DNA from: Octopus bimaculoides
Taxonomy: Eukaryota
Direction: 5' to 3'
DNA length: 44,310 nucleotides
Assembly: GCF_001194135.2 (NCBI RefSeq)
Contig: NC_069005.1
Span: 5,506,148 to 5,550,457 of the forward strand
Shown: positions 1-29,123 of the stretch, in pieces
How positions within the stretch are numbered: the first letter of the stretch is position 1
How the letters are laid out: each line of letters begins with the position of its first letter
Made by a program: the position numbers and the translations under genes
Notes under the pieces: generated by a model
Told to the model about the DNA's origin: nothing
The model's input: only the letters and a program-made list of their open reading frames with translations
Databases searched by the model: none

Positions 1-40
<40 letters not shown>

Positions 41-123
41 AGGTGCCAGGAGTGAGACGATGTTCGTAAAAACAAAAAAAAAAGAAGAAAGGGGATAAAC
101 AGCTTAAATGTCATTGATTACAG

Positions 124-169
124 GTCACCTGGGTCCATACTCACCTGAGATTAAACAACCTCTAAAACA
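124..169 (+). CDS. Possible additional upstream micro-exon of the Tyr-motif gene (HLGPYSPEIKQPLK)
   Basis: ttacag|...CA|gtaaac; 46 nt, open in the one frame whose phase-2 end fits the next exon at 579. The donor is weak and there is no homology support. Confidence 0.3.
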
Positions 170-578
170 GTAAACGCAACAATTCCATATTCCATATGGT
201 GCTTTCTACCAAGATAGACAACTACGATTACTACTGATTCCAGTGTAACGCTGGAGTTATCTCCCTTAAACTATTATACATACATACATACGTACGTATA
301 CACGCACATATATGTGTGTCGGCATACACACACACAGATATACATGTATGTATGTATGTACGTATACATAATCTTACTGAAAGGACCAAGTTTGTGGATA
401 AACTGCATTTTATACATTTAAATGCTTTAGAATCGAACAAAGAAAAAAGTGTCAGTAAAGTTCTATTATAAACTGTTTCTCTCTCTTTCTCTCACTGTCA
501 CTCTCTCTCTCTCGTCTCCATTTCTGTCGAATCGCAGAAGATAACTGATTCATCTTTCTTTGTGTTTGGTTTTTACAG

Positions 579-2334
579 TGAAATCCCATGTGACAGAGAA
601 GTCCTCGCTCTTCCACCAAACTCACGGAACAACTGCTGGGAATTACCTGAAGGTATATATCTCTCTCTCTCTCTCTGAGGTTGCCAATATAAATAAATAA
701 ATAAATAAATATACATATATATATATATATATACGTATGTATCTGTCTGTCTGTCTATTTATCTATCTGTCTCTATCTATCTATTTATCTATCTATCTAT
801 CTGTCTGTCTGTCTATCTATTTATCTATCTATCTATCTGTCTGTCTGTCTATCTATTTACCTGTCTGTCTCTATCTATCTATCAGTCTGTCAGTCTCCCT
901 GTCTATCTACCTCCTTTGTCAGTACAATCATGCCTCATCTCTCTTTTACATTAAGGTTTAAGCTGTAACGTGGCGGCACCGGATGAGAATTACTATGTCA
1001 GTATGAACAATGGTTTCACCTCAGACACACCCAACGTCAACAGGATGCTCTCCACACGGGGTTCTCGGTATGTAGCATCTGTCTGTCTAGCTTCCTACCC
1101 ATACATCCAGATACATGCATACATCTTATTTCTTTATTGCCCACAAGGGGCTAAGCAACACCATCCTTTTACTACTTCACTGCATCAACCCAAACAACAA
1201 CAATAACAACATCAATAAAACAGTCTTTAACCATCGTTAAATAAATAAGCCCTATGTTTTTTTTAATTTTGCTTTGTTTTCTTTTTTATTTTTAGCTACA
1301 GATTTGATGACCTCGACGAAGGAAACTGCGGCGGCAGGTCCCGAGTAGACACTCTTTATGTGCTCCCTGATCCAAAATTTAAGCCAGGAAATGCGAAAAC
1401 CTGCAGGATAAGAGAGGAGCCTGCGCAGATTTGTGGTAGTTCTTCAGATATTTACGTCAACGAGAGGCCGGAAAGTTCTGAAGCAACCTCAGCTAACAAC
1501 GACAGCGATGATATATACTCAGAAATTAAGACCGGTACCAACAATACTTCGCAGCCATTGCACTATGCAACGTACGAAGACATCAAGCAAGATAACAAGA
1601 CGGATGTTAACGGCAACGGTAGAAGTGGTCGTGGTAAGGACGGCAGTGGAAGAAGTGATAATGCTAAAGGCGAACATATGGAACTAACAGACCTTGCAAA
1701 GACGAAAACCGAGGATACTTACAACGTACCAAAATCTCATTCTAGATTTAACAACCAGAAATCGTCCGACGATCGTAACGACAATGCTGTTGGTGGTGGT
1801 AGTGGTGGTGACGACCGCAAAAACAATAATGGGGATAATGATAGCATTGAAGGGAGTCGCAGCAAAACCTGCGACAGTGGAATCTATATCTATCTGAACA
1901 GTAAAGAAGAGGAAGACGAGCAGGAGGACGAAAATGACATCATTTACAGTGTTCCATATAGTAACAGTAACAATAACAATAGCAACAACAATAACAGCAA
2001 TTGCAGCAACAACAACAACAGCCCATCACACAGAGACTGCATCAAGTGCAATGACACACGACAACCAAGAAAACAACGGCGCGCTGCCGTCGTCCAGTCG
2101 CATGTCTACCAAAACGCCATGTTCGATGGCGAGGAAGCTGGGCACAGCACTGACATTGCAAAGACGAACGCTTCGTCGCTTTCGTCATCACCATCACCAT
2201 CGTTATCGTCGTCGTCGTCGCTGCAACAGTGGCAAAACGATGGCATAATCTATAGCAATGTAGCAGACAATTGTTGTGACGATCAGACTTTATACCAAGA
2301 CATCGACAACACAAAGAATGAGGTCCATGTTTGA
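579..2334 (+). CDS. 3' part (last three coding exons: 579-652, 956-1067, 1296-2334) of a gene encoding a disordered, Tyr-motif-rich C-terminal tail; probable receptor or adaptor cytoplasmic domain; 5' end outside the window
   Basis: Phases join: ttttacag|579..652|gtatat (phase 2 to 1), ttaag|956..1067|gtatgt (1 to 2), tttag|1296..TGA 2334. Spliced product is open: EIPCDREVLALPPNSRNNCWELPEGLSCNVAAPDENYYVSMNNGF...RGSRYRFDDLDEG...DTLYVLP...DQTLYQDIDNTKNEVHV*. The terminal exon includes the 324-aa ORF in the track. Confidence 0.8.
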
Positions 2335-3911: not shown

Positions 3912-4594
3912 TGACTGACGTGTTTGGTTTCTGTAAGAAACCTACGAAACTGAAATGGGGCCGAATCAAATTGTTTTTAATAATAATGTACGTGTGCGTG
4001 TGTGTGTGTGTGTGTTCATAAATGTATGTGTATAAATGTATGTACATTCTGTCGAACAATCAGCTGACAAAAGCAAAAAAAAACAAAAAAAACTGTGGAT
4101 ACAGAAATTCATGCTGAAGTCTGTTTCAAACCCTCGTCTCATTCTCATTAAATCCATACAACATTTCCGCACGAGTGAGTGTATGTGCACGCATGAAAAC
4201 ATGATGTATATATGAAACAATAATCATCATCATCATCATCATCATCATCCTCATTGTTATCCTGAAACTCTCTTCTCTATATCTAATATCTCATTTAATT
4301 TGTATATAGACCAAATTAAAATCACCTTCATTAACCATCAATTGTGAACGATTGTTTTTTTATTTTTCTATCAAACTGTCATGAGTTGTTCTTGTTGTTG
4401 TTTAGCCCTTGGTCAGCTCTAACCAACCGGACCTACGCATTCCACTTCAAGCCATTGTTAGCCCTGCCTTTTGTTGTGGCCAAGCCATTGATTCCTTGAG
4501 TCAGTTCGTTCAGAGTTCCTTCTGCTCTCTTGCACATACACACTAGTAGATAGACAGACAGACAGACAGATAGATAGATGGACGGATAGATATA

Positions 4595-4751
4595 GGCACA
4601 GGAGTAGCTGTGCGGAAAGTAGGTTGCTTACCAGCCATGTTTCCGGGTTCAGTCCTACTGCGTGGCACTTTGGACCAGTGTCTTCTATTATAGTCTCAGG
4701 CTGACCAAAGCCTTGTGAGTAGATTTGGTAGATGGAAAATGGAAGAAACCC

Positions 4752-4796
<45 letters not shown>

Positions 4797-4950
4797 ATGT
4801 GTGTGTGTCTGCATTTGTTCCCATACCATCGCTTGACAACCGATGCTTGTGTGTTTACGTCCTCATAACTCGGCGGTTCAGCAAAAGAGTCCGATATGTC
4901 TTGGGGTCGATTTGCTCGACTAAAGGCGGTGCTCCAGCATGGCCGCAGTC
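4595..4950 (+). mobile_element. SINE family A (tRNA-like head, internal TA/GT microsatellite)
   Basis: GGCxCAGGAGTxGCTGTGTGGTAAG...GGTTCAGTCCC head, repeated many times in the window. Confidence 0.85.
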
Positions 4951-6452: not shown

Positions 6453-6810
6453 ATGTGGTAAGAAGCCTGCTTACTTCCCAACCACATGGCTCCAGGTTCA
6501 GTACCACTGCATGGCACCTTGGGCAAGTGTGTTCTACTTACTATAGCCTCAGGCAGACCAAAGCCTTGCGAGTGGATTTGGTAGATGGAAACTGAGAGAA
6601 GCCTGTCGTATATATGAGTGTGTCACCCTATACCACTTGACATCCAGTTGCTGGTGTTTACATCCCCATCACTTAGCAGTTCGGCAAATGAGGCCGATAA
6701 AATAGGTACTAGACTTTAATGAAACAAAGAAAATCCTGGGGTACATTTGTTCAACTAAAACCCTTGAAGGTGGTGCTCCAGCATGGCTGCAAATCAACTA
6801 ACAGAAACAA
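6453..6810 (+). mobile_element. SINE family A, diverged
   Basis: Same body as 7308-7698 and 40602-41012. Confidence 0.8.
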
Positions 6811-6835
6811 GACTATATGTGTATCTCTCTCTATT

Positions 6836-6887
<52 letters not shown>

Positions 6888-7307
6888 TACATACAAGGGT
6901 GAAGATTCACTGTAGACCAAGAGGTCATCTAATGGTGCGACATAATCCAAGAAGGTAATCCAAGAATTAAAGTAATACCTAAGTATCCGCTCGATACACA
7001 GATACCCATACATAGGGACAGGTTTCAATGCAGAGTCCCATAGTCATTATTCCAGTGTATTTTCTGGGTTCAAATTCCGCCAAGGTTGATAAATGAAGTA
7101 CCAGTGAAATACTGGAGGTTGATGTAATCGACTACTCCACACCCCAAAATTTTGAGGCCTTGTGCCTCGAGTAAACAGGGTTATTCCAGTGTCTTTTATG
7201 CTGTTTTGTTCCTCATTCTCCATTAGCAGACACTGCCCTTCACTTCAGACAAGACAATCCAAACATCTAGTAACTTATATTAAACGAACATTATTGGAAT
7301 ATTTGAG

Positions 7308-8945: not shown

Positions 8946-9180
8946 CACATACATATGCAAACATACACATACACACACACATATACATATATGTACATAC
9001 ATAGACACACACACGTGAATACATAGGTATATATACACACACACCAATATATATGCTCTTACATATACATAAATAGGCACACTCATAAACACACATACAC
9101 ACGTAAGCATGCTCTCTTGCACATACATGCGGACACACAAACACACATCAGTACATGTTCTTTTGCATACATAGATACAC

Positions 9181-9664: not shown

Positions 9665-9803
9665 TCAAAGGTTACAGGGGTTGAAGTCAGGGGTCGTTGG
9701 AGTAGTGAAACTGGCAGTGGTGGAGAAGGCGTGAAGGTTTCCCATTTGGCTCAGCCCACTCTGGATATGGTTGATGTGAATTTCCACATTGTTCTGGAAA
9801 GAG
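9665..9803 (-). CDS. LIN9: LIN9 last coding exon ([45 protein letters not shown])
   Basis: tctcttttag acceptor, phase 2; TGA at 9667-9665. Confidence 0.96.
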
Positions 9804-9817
9804 CTAAAAGAGATAAA

Positions 9818-9848
<31 letters not shown>

Positions 9849-12800
9849 TGCCAATACACACAGATAGAGAAATTAAGGCAAATAGACCAGATATAGTTGT
9901 CAGAGATCACCAAGGAAAAAAAATGCTTTCTAATTGATGTATTAATACCAGCAGATGACGTTTCCCTAAAAGAAATTGAAAAACTTTCAAAATACAAAGA
10001 CCTGGAAATAGAGGTAACTCGAATGTGGAATCTAAAAACAGAAACAATTCCTATCATAGTAGGTGCCTTAGGTATAATAAAAAAAATATTCAGACAAATA
10101 CATAACAAAAACACCAGGACTTACAAATATATATAACATACAGAAAATTGCACTACTGGGTACTGCACACATCCTACACAAAACACTTTCAATACAGTAA
10201 ACATAAGAGCATCACAGCAAACCACAGCACATACCCAAGGCGCACAGAGCTGCGCTCAGTAGTGAAGTGAAAGCACGTTATAAAAATAAAACTACTGAAC
10301 AATAATAATAATAATGATTTCAAATTTTGTCACAATTTTGGGGGAGGGGATTAAGTTGATTACATCAACCCCAGTACATGACTGGTACCTGATTTATCAA
10401 CCCTGAAAGGATGAAAGGCAAAGTCGACTTTGGCAGAATTTGAACGTGGTTAAGAGTTGTTTTGACTCTCATTTCTAGCAATGCTGGTGGTGACTAACAC
10501 CCTCCATCACTCTAAAGAAAATTGTACTTGTTACACACACACACTTTGCTTGCGAAGACCTGTTTGAGGCAAGTGAAATCAAAATCGTTGACGTGGCTGA
10601 TGACAGTGCCGCCTGATTGATACTTGTGCCAGTGGAACGTTAAAAGCATCATCCAAGCGTGATCGTTGCTAGGGCCACTGATTGGCTCCCATGCCGGTGG
10701 CACGTAAAAAGCACCATCCGAGCGTGATCGTTGCCAGCATCACCCTTACTGGCAGATGTGCCAGTGGCACGTGAAAAACAACATTCGAGCGTGGTTGTTG
10801 CCAGTGCCACCAGACTGGCTCCCGTGGGGGGAGGGGGGTAAACACAGGTACAAAGACACACACACACGTGACAGGCTTCTTTCAGTTTCCATCAACCAAA
10901 TCTACTCACAAGGCTTTGGTTGGCCTGAGGCTATAACAGAAGACACCTGTCCAAGGTGCTACGCAGTGGGCTTGAACCCAGAACCATGTGATTGGGAAGC
11001 AAACTTCTTACCACACAGCCACACCTATATATATATAGACACAAAGCTTAAAAGTGCTGCACCAAACTGTAAAAAGTACCTACTTTATGTTATTGCCATC
11101 CAAACTTTTCTTAATATCATCCAAGCTGTCTTGAAGGGAACAGAATTCAAAAGAATTGAAATCATTTTCAGCAAATGTCTGGGAAGAGAAAAAGAAGAAA
11201 AAAAAAAATGGTAAAGGAATTTGGATGGAAACAAATTAACATGAAATTTTGATGACAAGTTTTAACCCTTTTGTTACCTTATTGCTGTTGAAATGCACAG
11301 GTTTAGTTTTATTTAATTTTGGAAATAACTTCATCATTTATCTTTTATCTCTTAGCTTGTTTCAGTCATTGCACTGTGGCCATGCTGGTGCACTGCCTTG
11401 AAGAGACTTTAGTCAAATGAACTGACCCTGGTACTTATATTTTTAAAGCTCAGTAATTATTCTATTGGCTTCTTTAGCCAGTTCTAAGCTACAGGGATGT
11501 AAACACACAAACACTGGTTGTCAAGCAATGGTGGTGGGGACAAAGATGAACACACACACACATATATATATATATATACAAGCTTCTTTCAGATTCCATC
11601 GACCAAATCCACTCACAAGGCTTTGGTCAGCCCTGAGGCTATTGTAGAAAGACACTCGCCCAAGGTGCCACGCAGTGGGGCTGAACCCAAAACCATGTCG
11701 TTGGGCAGCAAGCTTCTTACCACACCAAACTAACTTTGTCATTATCCATCTGGTGGTGAGCTGGCAGAATCGTTGGCATGCTCGACAAAATGCTTAGTGG
11801 TATTTCACCCATCGCTGCATTCTGAGTTCAAATTCCACCAAGGTTGACTTTGCCTTTCATCCTTTCAGGGTCAATAAATTAAGTACCAGTTACACACTGG
11901 GGTTGATCTAATCAACTAGTACCCTCCCCCAGATTTGCGCCTATGGTAGAAAGGATTATTTCATCCTTTCAAGGTCAATAAATTAAGTACCAGTTACGCA
12001 CTGGGGTTGATCTAATCGACTAGTACCCTCCCCCAGATTTCAAGCCTTGCGCCTATGGTAGAAAGGATTATCTCTCTGGTGTTTGGAACATAAATTAACA
12101 AGAAATTTTAAAGGAAAGGTTTTAATNNNNNNNNNNNNNNNNNNNNNNNNNNNNNNNNNNNNNNNNNNNNNNNNNNNNNNNNNNNNNNNNNNNNNNNNNN
12201 NNNNNNNNNNNNNNNNNNNNNNNNNNNNNNNNNNNNNNNNNNNNNNNNNNNNNNNNNNNNNNNNNNNNNNNNNNNNNNNNNNNNNNNNNNNNNNNNNNNN
12301 NNNNNNNNNNNNNNNNNNNNNNNNNNNNNNNNNNNNNNNNNNNNNNNNNNNNNNNNNNNNNNNNNNNNNNNNNNNNNNNNNNNNNNNNNNNNNNNNNNNN
12401 NNNNNNNNNNNNNNNNNNNNNNNNNNNNNNNNNNNNNNNNNNNNNNNNNNNNNNNNNNNNNNNNNNNNNNNNNNNNNNNNNNNNNNNNNNNNNNNNNNNN
12501 NNNNNNNNNNNNNNNNNNNNNNNNNNNNNNNNNNNNNNNNNNNNNNNNNNGGTGGGAGTGGGTGAGTGGCAGCAGTGGGATGAGGTGGTGGTAGTAGTGG
12601 TTAGTGTTGATGGGTGTGGCGATGGTTGGTGTTGGCAGGAGTGGTAGGGTGAGGTGACAGCAGTGGGGGGTGAAAAGTGGTGGTGGTACTGGTGGGGGTA
12701 GTAGGAGTGATTGTGGTGGTATTGGTGAGGGTGGTAGGGTGAGGTGGCAATGGTTGTGGTGGCATTGGTGGGGGGAGTGTTTGTGGTGATTGTGTGAGAC

Positions 12801-15800: not shown

Positions 15801-17474
15801 TTATTTTATCAACACCCAGAAGGAAAAAAAGGAAATAAATTCGTGAAAGGTGCAGTCGATTGTACCCGCCTCAGTTCTTCACCGATTCTTATTTTATTGA
15901 TACCCAGAAAGAAGAAAAGCAAAATCAACTTTCATGGCATTTGGAAATAGAATATAAGGGTCATAACTACCATATTTTAACATGTATAAGGAACCCCCTA
16001 ATTTTGGGGACTTAAAATTTGGAAAAAAGGTTTTGTAAGGGATTATAATACTATCCATGTATAAGAAACTCCCATATTTTTTTAACCTAATTTTCGACAA
16101 AAAAAGGGTTCCTTATACAGGATGTGCACAAAGTCTGGGTACATGGGGATTAACACGTACTTTAAGAAATTATTGTTTCTTATATTTAATTGTTTATCTT
16201 ATGATTTTATTTACTCTGTGTACCCAGACCTTGTGGATACCCTGTACACATTAAAATACAGTTCAACCAGTTCAACTCATACCAGCAAAGTAAAGCAGAT
16301 ATAAAATAACGATGATGATGATGATGATGATGTATCATCATAATCTCACTAACGAGATTATGATGTACACGACTGAAGTTCTACAGAATTATTAAAATGG
16401 TATCTTTATCATTTCACAATAATGATAACGAGTGAAGATGACGACAGCAATGAACGATAATGAATGATGATTAATGACAATGAATGATAATGAATGACGG
16501 TGATGAAGTTTATTGGCTGCAAAATTAATACTTACAACATGTAACAAAAACTTCACTGGAAACCCTCCATAAGTGGCCCCTTCTAAACTCCGAAACTGGG
16601 TTTTTATGGGAGAACTGCTGAGAAGGGGATCGTTCTCCTGAAAAATACACACAACCATTAGTCATCATTAGAGATTTTATTTTATTTTCAAAACAAAAAA
16701 CAGTTGTTACCTGGCTAAAAAAAAAAAAAAATCCACGTAAAAATATAGACCCTAAATTGTTGTTGTTCTTGTTAATGCTATAATTGTTCACCCCCAGGTT
16801 GGTCTTGCTCCCCAATTNNNNNNNNNNNNNNNNNNNNNNNNNNNNNNNNNNNNNNNNNNNNNNNNNNNNNNNNNNNNNNNNNNNNNNNNNNNNNNNNNNN
16901 NNNNNNNNNNNNNNNNNNNNNNNNNNNNNNNNNNNNNNNNNNNNNNNNNNNNNNNNNNNNNNNNNNNNNNNNNNNNNNNNNNNNNNNNNNNNNNNNNNNN
17001 NNNNNNNNNNNNNNNNNNNNNNNNNNNNNNNNNNNNNNNNNNNNNNNNNNNNNNNNNNNNNNNNNNNNNNNNNNNNNNNNNNNNNNNNNNNNNNNNNNNN
17101 NNNNNNNNNNNNNNNNNNNNNNNNNNNNNNNNNNNNNNNNNNNNNNNNNNNNNNNNNNNNNNNNNNNNNNNNNNNNNNNNNNNNNNNNNNNNNNNNNNNN
17201 NNNNNNNNNNNNNNNNNNNNNNNNNNNNATAATAATAATGCCTTAGGTATAATAAAAAAATATTCAGACAAATGCATAACAAAAACACCAGGACTTACAA
17301 ATATATATAACATACAGAAAATTGCACTACTGGGCACAGCACACATCCTACGCAAAACACTTTCAATACAGTAACCATAAGAGCATCACAGCAAACCACA
17401 GCACATACCCAAGGCACAGAGAGCTGCGCTCGGTAGTGAAGTGAAAGCACGTTATAAAAATAAAACTACTGAAC

Positions 17475-25408: not shown

Positions 25409-28400
25409 GAGGAGGTCAGCTGGTAGAATTGTTAGAGTACTGGAAAAAATGTCTTGCGTCACGTTCCTGCTATTTTATGTTCTGACCTGCCAAGGTTGAC
25501 TTAGCCTTTCGTTCTTTCAGGGGTGTTGATAAAATAAAATACCAGTCAAGTACTGAGAGAGTGTGTGCATGTGTGTGTGTATGGGATGGGGGGTGTAATC
25601 AAATTCCCTCCTCCCCCTTTGCTCTTTCCTCATAATACTGACCTTTTGCCTGAATGAGATGATGATGATGATGACAATAATGATGACGGTGATGCTTATG
25701 ATGACCAGTGCTGACAACAATAATGATCACAACAAAAACGGGGGAGGGAGGAGGAGGTGGTGGTGGTGGTGATGGTAAATTGTTATGAAAGATGTTATGG
25801 TGTGGGGCTCCAGGCCCCATAATCATAATTTCAGCTCATATGACAAAGATGCTAAAACGTGATGTGAGGGATATTTGGCTGCTATTCCTAGCAAGTAAAG
25901 CAACCACATGGAAGGTCTCTCATCATCCCTCTATAGATGTTCGGGTTGCTTCAGAGCCTTTTTTTTTTTTCCTAATCTTTCTTTGTGCTGCACTCAGCTA
26001 TGTTGTAGGAGTGGAACTGGCTTTGTCAGTCAGATAGACTGAGTCAAACAGAGTTATATGCCCTTGATCACAACATCCTCAACATCATTGTTGTACATCC
26101 ATTTTTTTTCCATGCAGGAATGGGTTTGATGTTATGTATTGAGGTAAAATAATCCACAGCTGGATACTCTACCAGTCACCAACCCTGCTATCCTTGTTTC
26201 TCAAAGATAAGTGCAGGTGTGGTAAGAAGTTTGATTCTCAACCACATGGCTCTGAGTTCAATCGCACTGCGTGGTACTTTAGGCAAGTGTCTTCTACTAT
26301 AGCTGCAAGCTAACCAAGGCCTTGTGAGTGAATCTGATAGATGGAAACTGTAAGAAACCTATCAGGTGTGTGTGTATACATATATGTGTGTGTGTGGCCA
26401 ATGCCAGTGCCACCTGACTGGCACCCTTGTCGGTGGCACATAAAAAGCACCATCCAAGCATGGTCAATGCCAGTGCCGCCTGACTGGCTCCTGTGCCAGT
26501 GACATATATAAACACCCACTACACTCTTAGTGTGGTTTGACGTTAGGAAGGACATCCAGCTGTAGAAACACTGCCAGATCAGATTGGAGCCTGGTGCAGC
26601 CTCCTGGCTTGCCAGTCCTCAGTCAAATCATTCAACCCATGCCAGCATGGAAAGCAGACATTAAACAATGATGATGGTTGATGACATATATATATGTGTT
26701 ACTGGCTCCTTGCCTCGACATCATGTCACAGCTGTAAGCGAGTGTCACCATCATACAGGGTCCTTCATTCCCGATCTTTCATGAGAATACACGTCTGATC
26801 ATGGGGGAAATATTAACGTCACNNNNNNNNNNNNNNNNNNNNNNNNNNNNNNNNNNNNNNNNNNNNNNNNNNNNNNNNNNNNNNNNNNNNNNNNNNNNNN
26901 NNNNNNNNNNNNNNNNNNNNNNNNNNNNNNNNNNNNNNNNNNNNNNNNNNNNNNNNNNNNNNNNNNNNNNNNNNNNNNNNNNNNNNNNNNNNNNNNNNNN
27001 NNNNNNNNNNNNNNNNNNNNNNNNNNNNNNNNNNNNNNNNNNNNNNNNNNNNNNNNNNNNNNNNNNNNNNNNNNNNNNNNNNNNNNNNNNNNNNNNNNNN
27101 NNNNNNNNNNNNNNNNNNNNNNNNNNNNNNNNNNNNGGAAGAGGACTAACAAAGTGGGGTGAAAAGGAAGTAATGTGCCTGGGTGGAGGGAAAAGTAGCG
27201 AGGAAGAAGAGGAGGATGAGGGAGAAAAACTGTGCCTTGGTGGAGGAGGGTAACAGGGTTTGAACTCATGGCCATCTATATTGCAATAAAAAAAAAATAT
27301 TAAAAAAAAAATTGGGAAAAAAAAAATCTGCTAAACAATACAAATGACACAGTTACACACAAGACAATGAGTAAGCCCCTTACATGGTCAACTTGCCCTG
27401 CAAGAAATAGAAGTCAAATCCTCTTCAAATTACACTCAACTGTCTTAAGTAAAAAAAAAAAAAAAAAAGAGACAGATTAGAGAATGTGATCCTAGGGAAA
27501 AGGATGGAATATCTGTGATCGTAGGAGGTCCCTGACTTACTCCTCTCAAGGCTGACCAGGGGCTGAGACAACAACGAACAATGCAGGCAGGTACGTGATT
27601 ACAAAAGGACTACATTTACCGATGTCGACAAATTGGATGTGGGTGTTTTCGCTTGTTTCTTCGGAGTTTTGATACAATAACCAGATTCTTCTTCTTCATT
27701 GTAAAACCGAGAGTTTTTCTTCCGTATTCTCTGAGGCTACAAAATAATTTACAAACAACATTTTCATGGCTTGTGTGTTTGTTTTAATTTTTTAATTTAA
27801 TTCTACCCTTTAACCATTTCTTCAACAATATATTTCTTAAAAAAAAAAAAAATTCTCTTTTGTTCATTTATTTCAGTTACTGGACTGTGACCAGAATGGG
27901 GCACCACTGCCACCACAGGTTTTTTTTTTTTTCTTGGGAGCATTTCTTTGCTCTATTCATTAAGTCCCTTATACCAAACCTGGTACCTTCTCTGGTATAT
28001 ATTTTATCTATCTGATAAGAAATGAAAGGCAAGTCATCACTGGCTTAAAAGGAAGTCAGAACTCAATACTTTGAAGCCCCAAATTCCTTCATACTGCCCC
28101 TACACGCACACACAAAGGGTGCCAGTATAATAAGTACCGCATTTAAAACCAGAAATAAAAGAAAAGCAAATATTTAAGAACAAAAGAGAAACGGTAAAGT
28201 ACAAACAGAAAATACTGGAAACATTTCGACTTCTTTTTTTTAAGGATTTCTTAACACAAATTTTTTGTCGTATTTCATTTTGCTTTTCAATTAATTTTAG
28301 CTGGAAATGTGGTAATTACTTTAAATATATCCAATGTATGCAAGTGTATATGTGTGTATGTATATGTGCATGTGTGCATATATATGTATAAGTGTGTGCA

Positions 28401-28451
28401 TATATATGTATGCATATGTGCGTGTGTGCATATATATGCATGTATATATGC

Positions 28452-28510
<59 letters not shown>

Positions 28511-29123
28511 ATGGTCTTCTTTCAGCTTCTGGCTACCAAATCCACTCACAAGGCTTTGGTCAGCCTGAGGCTATATTAGAAGACACTTGCCCAAGGTGCC
28601 ACACAGTGAGACAGAACCCGGAACCATGTGGTTGGGCAGCAAGCTTCTTACCACATGCATCCCCCTAAAATAATCCAGGTTTTAGATCTGGCCCAGATAT
28701 TAGAAAGGTTGTGAACCCCTGCTCTAAACNNNNNNNNNNNNNNNNNNNNNNNNNNNNNNNNNNNNNNNNNNNNNNNNNNNNNNNNNNNNNNNNNNNNNNN
28801 NNNNNNNNNNNNNNNNNNNNNNNNNNNNNNNNNNNNNNNNNNNNNNNNNNNNNNNNNNNNNNNNNNNNNNNNNNNNNNNNNNNNNNNNNNNNNNNNNNNN
28901 NNNNNNNNNNNNNNNNNNNNNNNNNNNNNNNNNNNNNNNNNNNNNNNNNNNNNNNNNNNNNNNNNNNNNNNNNNNNNNNNNNNNNTTCCTCGTCGAGGAG
29001 GCGTCCTGTAGCAGCCTTTGCCTGGAAAATTGGAAACAAAATGAGAAGAAAAAGGTAATGACTTCATAAACAATACAAGCAAAAGGAATGTTTTACATTC
29101 TGCAGTGATCTTGTGATTAAGGA

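What the first reader, a model, noticed from the sequence alone, without database searches (positions are those of the whole stretch)
579..2334. Unidentified signalling tail with about 12 phosphotyrosine-type docking motifs and a PDZ-type C-terminus
Seen: the spliced product is low-complexity (Asn/Asp/Ser/Gly runs). Nearly every Tyr sits in an acidic-then-hydrophobic context: ENYYVSM, DTLYVLP, SDIYVNE, DDIYSEI, HYATYEDI, EDTYNVP, SGIYIYLN, DIIYSVP, HVYQNA, GIIYSNV, QTLYQDI, then EVHV*. Established: YxxM binds PI3K p85; YxN binds Grb2; YxxP binds Crk/Nck/Abl-type SH2 domains; IxYxxV is ITIM-like; TxYxxI is ITSM-like; hydrophobic-x-hydrophobic C-termini are class II PDZ ligands; acidic residues before Tyr favour Src/Syk kinases. 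Inference: this is the cytoplasmic hub of a transmembrane receptor or LAT/PAG-like adaptor, possibly a lineage-specific cephalopod immune or neural receptor combining activating and inhibitory motifs. I do not recognise it as a named gene.
Basis: partly seen in the sequence, partly recalled or inferred. Interest (0 to 1): 0.72.

Follow-up and report, generated by a model that had tools for sequence, protein, structure and literature searches.

The report
Tyrosine-rich tail of an octopus EMI-domain receptor
These three exons encode the cytoplasmic tail of an uncharacterised, mollusc-restricted single-pass membrane protein whose conserved tyrosine motifs suggest a phosphotyrosine docking platform; no phosphorylation, binding or expression was tested here.

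Summary
Window 579-2334 (+) carries the last three coding exons (579-652, 956-1067, 1296-2334) of an Octopus bimaculoides gene.

The Tyr contexts are not random. I/L/V sits at -1 in 9 of 16 (2.0 expected), and a hydrophobic residue or Pro sits at +3 in 9 of 16 (2.8 expected). Upstream acidity is explained by composition alone.

Full-length orthologues (O. sinensis, O. vulgaris) place, upstream of this tail:
- a signal peptide;
- one divergent six-Cys EMI-like domain;
- an alternatively spliced Thr/Pro stalk;
- one TM helix followed by RRRKK.

In O. bimaculoides the TM exon most likely falls in the assembly gap just before window base 1. The gene is therefore annotated as two fragments, one misnamed a Ser/Thr kinase.

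Relatives were found only in cuttlefish, another cephalopod-like transcriptome and, weakly, oyster. Tyr and their flanks are preferentially conserved, and dN/dS is 0.10 near Tyr against 0.30 in the linkers.

There are no EGF repeats, no NPxY and no canonical ITAM, so it is not a Draper/MEGF10 member. The EVHV C-terminus occurs only in Octopus.

Best reading: an uncharacterised EMI-domain receptor or adaptor whose tail docks SH2 proteins after Src-type phosphorylation. That mechanism is inferred, not shown.

The parts
579..652 (+). Coding exon e1 (third from last): juxtamembrane segment (S)EIPCDREVLALPPNSRNNCWELPE. Base 579 completes a codon begun in the upstream TM exon, which is not in the window.
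   Evidence: AG|T acceptor and AAG|GTATAT donor. The junction to e2 gives ...ELPE-G-LSCNV..., as in O. vulgaris and O. sinensis and the older O. bimaculoides model P0029. 96% nucleotide identity to O. sinensis L004 11055-11128.
653..955 (+). Intron containing a (TATC/TGTC)n microsatellite at 736-888.
956..1067 (+). Coding exon e2: LSCNVAAPDENYYVSMNNGFTSDTPNVNRMLSTRGS(R). It holds the conserved YxxM motif (ENYYVSM, 985-1005).
   Evidence: The motif is conserved as ENSYISM and ENAYMSM in the cephalopod relatives. The same exon boundary is seen in Sepia pharaonis L006.
1051..1311 (+). STRGSRYRFDD, the most conserved non-acidic block of the tail. It spans the e2/e3 junction; the intron 1068-1295 lies inside this range.
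   Evidence: Its function is unexplained.
1296..2334 (+). Last coding exon e3 (345 codons plus the stop at 2332-2334): the bulk of the disordered Tyr-motif tail.
   Evidence: 92% nucleotide identity to O. sinensis. Whole-tail dN/dS is 0.22.
1348..1374 (+). DTLYVLPDP, a YxxP motif conserved in cephalopods (NSMYMAPDP, DSLYMVPDS).
1441..1464 (+). SSDIYVNE, a YxN motif conserved in cephalopods (SSDIYING, AADIYING).
1507..1584 (+). DDIYSEI followed after 15 residues by YEDI: an ITAM-like pair whose spacer is too long for the canonical definition. It is conserved as YSEI-x15/16-Yxx[IV].
1711..1731 (+). EDTYNVP, a YxxP motif that aligns only loosely in the relatives.
1870..1959 (+). CDSGIYIYLN and DIIYSVPY, distal motifs. 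TCDSGIY is shared with relative P0005 and absent from the short cuttlefish tail.
2101..2118 (+). HVYQNA, a YxN motif that aligns with DFYENC in P0005.
2242..2304 (+). GIIYSNV (ITIM-like) followed after 10 residues by QTLYQDI. Compare VIYSDI in P0005 and MVYSDV at the oyster C-terminus.
2320..2334 (+). C-terminus EVHV plus the stop codon. It has the Phi-x-Phi form of a class II PDZ ligand and is found only in Octopus species.

Best explanation
Window 579-2334 encodes the whole cytoplasmic tail, apart from the first few membrane-proximal residues, of an uncharacterised type I single-pass membrane protein of Octopus bimaculoides.

The full protein, seen in the orthologues, consists of:
- a signal peptide;
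- one divergent six-cysteine EMI-like domain;
- a short, alternatively spliced Thr/Pro-rich stalk;
- a TM helix followed by RRRKK;
- a disordered tail of about 420 residues.

Shown here: the exon structure, the architecture in orthologues, the non-random sequence context of the Tyr residues, their preferential conservation, and purifying selection on the tail.

Inferred mechanism: when the EMI ectodomain binds a ligand or clusters, Src-family kinases phosphorylate the [I/L]-Y-x-x-[V/I/L/M/P] sites. Hydrophobic residues at -1 and +3 are the classic Src-type preference. The phosphorylated sites then recruit SH2-domain effectors. By motif class the candidates are:
- PI3K p85 at YVSM;
- Grb2 at YVNE and YQN;
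- Crk, Nck or Abl-type SH2 domains at YVLP, YNVP and YSVP;
- Src, Csk or a Syk/Shark-type tandem SH2 at YSEI-x15-YEDI;
- possibly SHP2 at IIYSNV.

The protein would thus work like the signalling half of Draper/MEGF10/PEAR1 or like a transmembrane adaptor. It does not belong to either family.
For: - Exons and frame: confirmed by the independent models P0001 and P0029 and by orthologues.
- Source: the window lies on O. bimaculoides CM046625.1 directly after an assembly gap. The EMI exons and an alternative stalk exon lie upstream in L001.
- Missing TM exon: the O. sinensis gene has 9 exons over 12.5 kb with no gaps, and its TM exon ends about 1.4 kb upstream of e1. The same spacing in O. bimaculoides falls inside the gap.
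- Topology: an N-terminal signal-like segment, one TM segment (Kyte-Doolittle 2.97) followed by RRRKK, and a tail with mean hydropathy -1.26 and 73% disorder-promoting residues.
- EMI-like domain: Pfam EMI is the top hit for the octopus domain alone (17.7 bits, E 0.0063, model positions 1-68 of 69). It recurs below threshold in all four relatives. hhalign against Pfam-validated EMI domains gives 89.5% probability, E 2e-6. The Cys spacing is close to that of MEGF10. UniProt names the cuttlefish and oyster relatives 'EMI domain-containing protein'.
- Tyr context: -1 I/L/V in 9 of 16 against 2.0 expected; +3 in 9 of 16 against 2.8 expected, p 3.5e-4. A similar bias appears in P0005 and, at -1 only, in oyster.
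- Conservation against P0005: 9 of 16 Tyr retained against 22% identity for other residues (Fisher p 0.004). Flanks within 3 residues are 40% identical against 18% elsewhere (p 1e-4).
- Selection, O. bimaculoides against O. sinensis: dN/dS is 0.22 overall, 0.10 within 4 residues of a Tyr and 0.30 in the linkers.
- Expression in relatives: contiguous full-length coding sequences sit on 2.2-2.8 kb Logan contigs, while the genomic genes span 12-57 kb. These contigs therefore behave as spliced transcripts.
Against: - No phosphorylation, binding or expression data exist for this protein, here or in the searchable literature.
- The motif classes are short and degenerate. Six of the sites also fit YxxPhi endocytic signals.
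- The EMI assignment is below Pfam's gathering score (17.7 against 25 bits), and the AlphaFold model of the domain was unusable (pLDDT 49.7).
- The distal half of the tail is missing in cuttlefish, so it is dispensable there.
- The Tyr-context bias is not significant in the short cuttlefish tail.
- The best-conserved block (RMLSTRGSRYRFDD) is basic rather than Src-like and is unexplained.
- The dN/dS contrast rests on small counts: 8 non-synonymous changes near Tyr against 32 in the linkers.
Confidence: 0.6

Rival explanations
1. The Tyr motifs are mainly YxxPhi sorting signals read, unphosphorylated, by AP-2 and other clathrin adaptors. The protein would then be an endocytic or scavenger-type receptor whose tail drives internalisation and trafficking rather than signalling.
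For: Six octopus sites fit YxxPhi (YVSM, YSEI, YEDI, YIYL, YSNV, YQDI), and several are conserved in relatives. The tail is long, disordered and accessible. From general knowledge, dual-use motifs exist, for example YVKM in CTLA-4.
Against: The strongest bias is I/L/V at -1 (9 of 16 against 2.0 expected). From general knowledge that is a kinase preference, not a mu2-adaptin one. Conserved YxN and YxxP sites (YVNE, YVLP) lack a bulky hydrophobic residue at +3 or carry Pro there, and do not fit YxxPhi. One sorting signal normally suffices, whereas here about ten are conserved. The two readings are not mutually exclusive.
Confidence: 0.15
2. The tail is a low-complexity disordered spacer. Its Tyr residues are kept for a non-motif reason, such as aromatic 'stickers' for condensation or general structural contacts. 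The resemblance to SH2 docking sites is then coincidental.
For: 53 Asn and 52 Ser in 407 residues, with poly-N and poly-S runs. The linkers diverge fast and carry indels. The distal half is absent in cuttlefish. NCBI's name for the protein comes from low-complexity similarity.
Against: Flanking positions are conserved as well as the Tyr: 40% against 18% identity. Specific +1 to +3 residues are kept across cephalopods (YxSM, Y[VI]N, YSEI, Y[VM]xP). dN/dS near Tyr is 0.10. From general knowledge, a sticker model predicts conservation of aromatic content and spacing rather than of motif class.
Confidence: 0.1
3. It is the cephalopod orthologue of the Draper/CED-1/MEGF10 engulfment receptor, with either a reduced ectodomain or a mis-annotated one.
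For: An N-terminal EMI-like domain with MEGF10-like six-Cys spacing, a single TM helix and a Tyr-rich tail, as in that family (PMC8092387).
Against: The ectodomain has exactly six Cys, all within the EMI-like domain, and Pfam finds no EGF repeat. The O. sinensis gene is gap-free, with every coding exon accounted for, so no EGF exons are hidden. No family member has NPxY or a canonical ITAM. Searching 1.84 billion representatives with the full protein returned no MEGF10- or Draper-like protein at E <= 0.001.
Confidence: 0.05
4. It is a serine/threonine protein kinase, as the NCBI product names say ('probable serine/threonine-protein kinase DDB_G0277165 / DDB_G0282963').
For: Only the automatic names themselves.
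Against: Pfam finds no kinase domain, and no domain at all at E <= 1, in the full-length orthologue. The sequence is a signal peptide, an EMI-like domain, a TM helix and a disordered tail. The name most likely reflects Asn/Ser-rich low-complexity similarity to Dictyostelium proteins.
Confidence: 0.01

Closest known systems
Draper / CED-1 / MEGF10 / PEAR1 (Jedi-1) engulfment receptors
   Same: Type I single-pass proteins with an N-terminal EMI domain. The six-Cys spacing here (C-x24-C-x5-C-x25-CC-x9-C) is close to that of MEGF10 (C-x25-C-x8-C-x24-CC-x9-C). Their cytoplasmic tails are phosphorylated on Tyr by Src-family kinases and read by SH2 or PTB proteins such as Syk/Shark and GULP/CED-6 (PMC8092387). 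The likely mode of action is the same.
   Different: No EGF or NIM repeats at all: the ectodomain is the EMI-like domain plus a short stalk. There is no NPxY and no canonical ITAM, only a YSEI-x15/16-Yxx[IV] pair. No tail similarity was detectable. Instead the tail carries YxxM, YxN and YxxP sites typical of growth-factor or adaptor-type docking proteins.
Transmembrane adaptor proteins (LAT, PAG/Cbp, NTAL, LIME, SIT)
   Same: A single TM helix, a long disordered tail with about ten Tyr docking motifs (YxN for Grb2, YSSV/YSEI-type for Csk or Src) and no enzymatic domain.
   Different: Those adaptors have ectodomains of only a few residues and, in most cases, a conserved juxtamembrane CxxC palmitoylation site (general knowledge). 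This protein has a folded Cys-rich ectodomain of about 80 residues plus a stalk. Only octopus has a single Cys at the membrane boundary (VACRRRKK), and the decapodiform relatives have none. There is no sequence homology.
EMI-domain proteins in general (EMILINs, multimerins, EMID1)
   Same: The Cys-rich N-terminal module with the YR...CCxG[FY]...C signature.
   Different: Those proteins are secreted matrix proteins with coiled-coil, collagen or gC1q regions. This one is membrane-anchored with a signalling-type tail. Its EMI match is below the Pfam threshold, and it lacks the conserved Trp residues of the reference EMI domains.

Membership tests
EMI domain (Pfam PF07546) | Score at or above the Pfam gathering threshold (25 bits) | tested here: not met
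   The octopus domain alone scores 17.7 bits, E 0.0063, covering model positions 1-68 of 69. The full-length octopus protein gives no hit at E <= 1. The relatives score 14.8, 12.2, 11.5 and 8.0 bits. EMI is the top hit for the isolated octopus domain and for P0003, and recurs at the same place lower in the lists of the other three, but never reaches threshold.
EMI domain (Pfam PF07546) | Profile-profile similarity to bona fide EMI domains, including the YR...CCxG[FYW]...C signature | tested here: met
   hhalign of the family alignment A3 against four sequences that Pfam scores as EMI at 55-71 bits gives probability 89.5%, E 2e-6, over 39 columns covering the C-terminal half.
EMI domain (Pfam PF07546) | Cysteine pattern and position directly after the signal peptide | tested here: met
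   Six invariant Cys with spacing x24, x5, x25, CC, x9, against MEGF10-type x25, x8, x24, CC, x9. The domain starts about 15 residues after the signal-like segment.
Draper/CED-1/MEGF10/PEAR1 receptors | Multiple EGF-like or NIM repeats after the EMI domain | tested here: not met
   No EGF hit in Pfam. There are no Cys in the ectodomain outside the six of the EMI-like domain. The O. sinensis locus is gap-free with all exons mapped.
Draper/CED-1/MEGF10/PEAR1 receptors | NPxY motif in the tail (the GULP/CED-6 PTB site) | tested here: not met
   A regular-expression scan of the octopus, cuttlefish-like, P0005 and oyster tails found none.
Draper/CED-1/MEGF10/PEAR1 receptors | ITAM (Yxx[LI]-x6-12-Yxx[LI]) or YxxL in the tail | tested here: not met
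   No canonical ITAM in any member. A conserved YSEI-x15/16-Yxx[IV] pair exists, and octopus also has YSNV-x10-YQDI.
Draper/CED-1/MEGF10/PEAR1 receptors | Single-pass type I topology | tested here: met
   A signal-like N-terminus and one TM segment followed by a basic cluster in the orthologues. The TM exon is not present in the O. bimaculoides assembly.
Transmembrane adaptor proteins (LAT/PAG type) | Very short ectodomain with no folded ligand-binding domain | tested here: not met
   The ectodomain is about 110-165 residues and includes a Cys-rich EMI-like domain.
Transmembrane adaptor proteins (LAT/PAG type) | Juxtamembrane CxxC palmitoylation motif | tested here: not met
   Octopus has one Cys (VACRRRKK). 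The decapodiform relatives read VIVLRKR and VVVYKRRKK, and oyster reads MLGIRRNK.
Transmembrane adaptor proteins (LAT/PAG type) | Multiple conserved Tyr docking motifs in a disordered tail, with no catalytic domain | tested here: met
Class II PDZ ligand | Phi-x-Phi at the extreme C-terminus, conserved among orthologues | tested here: inconclusive
   V-H-V is present and identical in three Octopus species, but these are too close to be informative. Relatives end THTS (P0005), SSSH (cuttlefish, confirmed in the genome) and DVRY (oyster). PDZ binding cannot be tested with these tools.
ITIM / ITSM immunoreceptor motifs | [SIVL]xYxx[IVL] (ITIM) or TxYxx[IV] (ITSM), conserved | tested here: inconclusive
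   O. bimaculoides has IIYSNV (ITIM) and TLYQDI (ITSM). O. sinensis reads MIYRNV, as does O. vulgaris, so the strict ITIM is lost there. P0005 has VIYSDI and oyster has MVYSDV.
Phosphotyrosine docking sites (functional class) | Tyr actually phosphorylated and bound by SH2 or PTB domains | not testable with these tools
   Only sequence context and conservation are available.

The most novel reading that the evidence does not exclude
This may be the founding member of a mollusc-specific family of 'mini-Draper' receptors: a lone EMI domain wired directly to a composite docking tail that combines PI3K, Grb2 and Crk-type sites, an extended ITAM-like pair and an ITIM-like site. Such a protein would act as a recognition or engulfment-type immunoreceptor, or as a neuron-glia receptor, in cephalopods, which lack vertebrate-type immunoreceptors. 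The family would show that the EMI module alone can serve as the sensing ectodomain of a phosphotyrosine signalling receptor.
Probability: 0.3. Interest if true: 0.55.

Novelty: new variant of a known kind. Interest (0 to 1): 0.42.

Why it matters
Cephalopods have complex nervous systems and an innate-only immune system, yet very few of their cell-surface signalling receptors are characterised.

This gene is hidden in O. bimaculoides. It is split by an assembly gap into a 74-residue 'secreted protein' and a tail misnamed as a Ser/Thr kinase.

Recognising it as one EMI-domain, single-pass receptor with about ten conserved Tyr docking motifs does three things:
- it corrects the annotation;
- it defines a small lineage-restricted family (octopus, cuttlefish, another cephalopod-like source, probably oyster);
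- it gives a compact, testable candidate for Src/SH2-type signalling in molluscs.

The architecture pairs an EMI domain with a Tyr-rich tail and has no EGF repeats. It is also a natural minimal version of the Draper/MEGF10 design used to build chimeric phagocytic receptors.

The finding is a sound annotation-level discovery rather than a surprise in mechanism.

Tried and rejected
- **Ectodomain word search.** A word-indexed homologue search with the ectodomain and proximal tail returned only the O. bimaculoides fragment.
- **Family-alignment search.** The third word-indexed search, using family alignment A2, was swamped by low-complexity candidates and returned only the octopus proteins. The query should have been trimmed of its poly-N/S regions.
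- **Pfam on the full orthologue.** No hit. Only the isolated domain gives the sub-threshold EMI hit.
- **PDB sequence searches.** A single sequence and a profile of the ectodomain both found nothing at E <= 10.
- **Structure prediction.** The AlphaFold2 model of the EMI-like domain, built on a 6-sequence alignment, had mean pLDDT 49.7 and pTM 0.26. It is unusable, so no fold search was run.
- **TM exon.** I looked for it in the 9 kb upstream of the window (L001) by tblastn and by ORF listing and did not find it. It most likely lies in the N gap at L001 7591-8998.
- **Exact lookup of O. vulgaris P0002.** Not on record.
- **Synteny.** The oyster neighbours are a B-box protein and a DUF3504 protein, and the cuttlefish flanks are empty. 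This gives nothing for or against orthology.
- **Literature.** Searches by accession, by SRA run and by 'EMI domain' plus 'cephalopod' found nothing relevant.
- **Rfam.** No RNA family matched in the window.
- **Weak Pfam hits treated as chance.** HGAL (E 0.48), and Cadherin_C_2 and Protocadherin over the TM region.
- **Ser/Thr kinase name.** Rejected as a low-complexity artefact.
Full report
**1. What is at the coordinates**

The window is eukaryotic DNA. It is about 38% G+C, rich in microsatellites and contains several N gaps.

An exact protein lookup places it on Octopus bimaculoides chromosome record CM046625.1 (GCA_001194135.2). Window base 1 equals base 8999 of locus L001, directly after an assembly gap at L001 7591-8998.

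Positions 579-2334 on the + strand hold three exons with canonical boundaries: 579-652, 956-1067 and 1296-2334, with the stop at 2332-2334. Base 579 completes a codon begun upstream. The e1/e2 junction creates a Gly codon (G|GT) and the e2/e3 junction an Arg codon (CG|C).

The spliced product is 407 residues, EIPCDREVLALPPNSRNNCWELPEGLSCNVAAPDENYYVSM...NTKNEVHV*. Three lines of evidence confirm the junctions:
- the NCBI model XP_014785322.1 (P0001, 367 aa, 100% identical, starting at a Met inside e2);
- an older O. bimaculoides model, P0029 (421 aa), which uses all three exons;
- the O. vulgaris and O. sinensis orthologues.

**2. Is the Tyr pattern real?**

The tail has 16 Tyr.

| Feature | Observed | Expected from 20,000 shuffles | p |
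|---|---|---|---|
| I/L/V at -1 | 9 of 16 | 2.0 | reached by no shuffle |
| I/L/V/M/P at +3 | 9 of 16 | 2.8 | 3.5e-4 |
| Combined pattern (I/L/V/T at -1, acid upstream, hydrophobic or Pro at +3) | 7 | 0.2 | reached by no shuffle |
| Acidic residue within -4..-1 | 10 of 16 | 8.1 | 0.24 |

The tail is acidic everywhere, so upstream acidity carries no signal. The hydrophobic bracketing of Tyr is the real signal.

The same bias is seen in relative P0005 (p 0.03 at -1, p 0.002 at +3) and, at -1 only, in the oyster relative (p 1.5e-4). It is not significant in the short cuttlefish-type tail.

**3. The rest of the protein**

They lie outside the window but could be recovered.

O. vulgaris P0002 and the O. 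sinensis isoforms X1-X3 (P0023-25) place the following in front of this tail:
- a signal-like segment, MKIEL(W/L)IGVFPWLCILASS;
- a Cys-rich domain of about 80 residues;
- a Thr/Pro-rich stalk built from two alternatively used exons;
- one strong TM segment, IAVVVSAAVAACLLAAIIV (Kyte-Doolittle 2.97), followed by ACRRRKK.

The tail after the TM segment has mean hydropathy -1.26 and 73% disorder-promoting residues.

The O. sinensis gene (L004) has 9 coding exons over 12.5 kb with no gaps. In O. bimaculoides, two EMI-domain exons and one alternative stalk exon are found upstream in L001. The TM exon is not. By the O. sinensis spacing it should end about 1.4 kb upstream of e1, which falls inside the assembly gap.

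This explains why the gene is annotated as two fragments:
- P0028, a 74-residue 'Secreted protein' covering the N-terminus;
- P0001, named 'probable serine/threonine-protein kinase DDB_G0277165'.

Pfam finds no kinase domain, or any other domain, in the full-length orthologue. The name is a low-complexity artefact.

**4. The ectodomain**

Scanned on its own, the octopus Cys-rich domain has Pfam EMI (PF07546) as its best hit: 17.7 bits, E 0.0063, model positions 1-68 of 69. That is below the 25-bit gathering score. The same family recurs below threshold, at the same place, in all four relatives.

A profile-profile comparison of the family alignment against them gives 89.5% probability and E 2e-6 over the YR...CCxG[FY]...C half.

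The six invariant Cys are spaced x24, x5, x25, CC, x9. MEGF10 has x25, x8, x24, CC, x9. UniProt already labels the cuttlefish and oyster relatives 'EMI domain-containing protein'.

I therefore call this a divergent EMI-like domain, with two caveats: it is below the Pfam threshold, and no usable structure model was obtained (pLDDT 49.7).

**5. Relatives and conservation**

A full HMMER scan of 1.84 billion representative proteins found only five clusters at E <= 0.001:
- the octopus protein itself;
- P0003 and P0004, cuttlefish type (P0004 is from Acanthosepion/Sepia pharaonis);
- P0005, from an unidentified run, SRR24189504;
- P0006, from oyster (Magallana gigas LOC105322057), with E 5.9e-4 and matching on the EMI domain only.

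All share the layout of signal peptide, EMI-like domain, stalk, TM helix, basic cluster and Tyr-rich tail.

P0003 and P0005 sit as uninterrupted coding sequences on contigs of 2.8 and 2.2 kb, whereas the genomic genes span 12-57 kb. These contigs therefore behave as spliced mRNAs.

The Sepia genome has the same exon junctions, but its tail is short and ends ...TSSSH.

Six proximal motifs are shared across the aligned cephalopod tails:
- ENxY[VIM]SM;
- GS[RG]YR[FL];
- [ST][LM]Y[VM]xPD;
- DIY[VI]N;
- [DN]IYSEI;
- a further Yxx[IV] 15-16 residues after YSEI.

Octopus and P0005 also share TCDSGIY, a YxN site and a distal [IV]IYS[ND][VI] motif. The oyster tail ends with MVYSDVRY.

Conservation was measured between O. 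bimaculoides and P0005:

| Class | Identity | Comparison | Fisher p |
|---|---|---|---|
| Tyr | 9 of 16 retained | 22% for other residues | 0.004 |
| Residues within 3 of a Tyr | 40% | 18% elsewhere | 1e-4 |

Selection was measured between O. bimaculoides and O. sinensis:

| Region | dN/dS |
|---|---|
| Whole tail | 0.22 |
| Within 4 residues of a Tyr | 0.10 |
| Linkers | 0.30 |

**6. Mechanism**

Shown:
- a single-pass membrane topology in the orthologues;
- a disordered tail under purifying selection;
- Tyr embedded in conserved [I/L]-Y-x-x-[hydrophobic or Pro] contexts.

Inferred from established specificity rules:
- Src-family kinases prefer I/V/L at -1 and a hydrophobic residue at +3.
- p85 SH2 domains bind pYxxM.
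- Grb2 binds pYxN.
- Crk, Nck and Abl bind pYxxP.
- Src and Csk SH2 domains bind pY[ES][ES][IV]-type sites.
- Tandem SH2 kinases bind paired Yxx[LI] sites.

The most likely mechanism is that clustering or ligand binding through the EMI ectodomain leads to Src-type phosphorylation of the tail. The tail then assembles PI3K, Grb2 and Crk-type effectors, with possible Syk/Shark or SHP2 input.

This is how Draper and MEGF10 work (PMC8092387). Nothing here shows phosphorylation, binding or tissue of expression.

**7. Membership**

The defining features of the Draper/CED-1/MEGF10 family were tested and mostly not met:
- no EGF or NIM repeats, since the ectodomain has no Cys beyond the six in the EMI-like domain and no exons are hidden in the gap-free O. 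sinensis locus;
- no NPxY;
- no canonical ITAM.

It is not a LAT/PAG-type adaptor either. It has a folded ectodomain and lacks a conserved CxxC motif.

The EVHV end fits the class II PDZ form but is confined to three near-identical Octopus species. The strict ITIM (IIYSNV) becomes MIYRNV in the other Octopus species.

**8. Rivals**

- YxxPhi endocytic signals explain six sites. They do not explain the -1 bias or the conserved YxN and YxxP sites. The two readings may coexist.
- A motif-free 'sticky' disordered spacer does not explain the conservation of the flanks.
- A reduced Draper orthologue fails the feature tests above.
- The kinase name is an artefact.

**9. Novelty and verdict**

No paper in the searchable library mentions these accessions or an EMI-domain receptor of this type in cephalopods. 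Databases list the proteins as hypothetical, uncharacterised or misnamed.

It is a new variant of a known kind: an EMI-domain, single-pass receptor or adaptor with a multi-Tyr docking tail and no EGF repeats, restricted as far as was found to cephalopods and probably oyster.

Its specific partner, PDZ, ITIM/ITSM and tissue claims remain unverified or weak. Interest is moderate.

**10. Unexplained**

The best-conserved stretch of the tail...RMLSTRGSRYRFDD..., spans the e2/e3 junction. It is basic rather than acidic and matches no motif I could assign.

Noticed in passing
L001 7591-8998 (immediately upstream of window base 1); window 1-578: An assembly gap abuts the window start. By the O. sinensis exon spacing it should contain the TM exon of this gene. 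As a result the O. bimaculoides gene is split into a 74-aa 'Secreted protein' (A0A0L8G048) and a truncated tail model.
   Followed up: yes
window 1003-2334 (model XP_014785322.1): The NCBI product name 'probable serine/threonine-protein kinase DDB_G0277165' (and DDB_G0282963 in O. sinensis) is a low-complexity artefact. Pfam finds no kinase domain in the full-length orthologue.
   Followed up: yes
window 1051-1067 and 1296-1311: The most conserved block of the tail across cephalopods is the basic stretch RMLSTRGSRYRFDD at the e2/e3 junction, not an acidic Tyr island. No motif could be assigned; it may be a basophilic Ser/Thr kinase site or a separate binding site.
   Followed up: partly
L004 6266-6340 and 8721-8852 (O. 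sinensis); L001 about 6775-6890 (O. bimaculoides, outside the window): Two alternatively used stalk exons, one Thr/Pro-rich and one reading EIHSSGRIRIDGGPLF..., produce isoforms of 573, 590 and 629 aa. These differ only in the length of the extracellular stalk.
   Followed up: partly
L006 66046-66534 (Sepia pharaonis): The cuttlefish orthologue spans 57 kb with the same exon junctions but has a short tail ending ...TSSSH, with no distal Tyr motifs. The public model P0004 also carries spurious N- and C-terminal extensions.
   Followed up: partly
window about 9665 onward, minus strand: The downstream neighbour is a LIN9-like gene. Its called product is 529 aa with DIRP and LIN9_C domains, and it is transcribed towards the tail gene.
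   Followed up: no
window 4458-4829 (-), 10756-11214 (+), 28309-28668 (+); also 9665-10114 (-) and 16788-17288 (-): Interspersed repeat copies. Three ORFs share the peptide QIYSQGFG(Q/W)PE..EDT.P.C..V..NPE, and two others share [11 protein letters not shown]. These are probably transposable-element remnants.
   Followed up: no
window 736-888: A (TATC/TGTC)n microsatellite of about 150 bp lies in the intron between e1 and e2. (AT)n and (TA)n arrays and N gaps follow the 3' end of the gene, starting near 2870.
   Followed up: no
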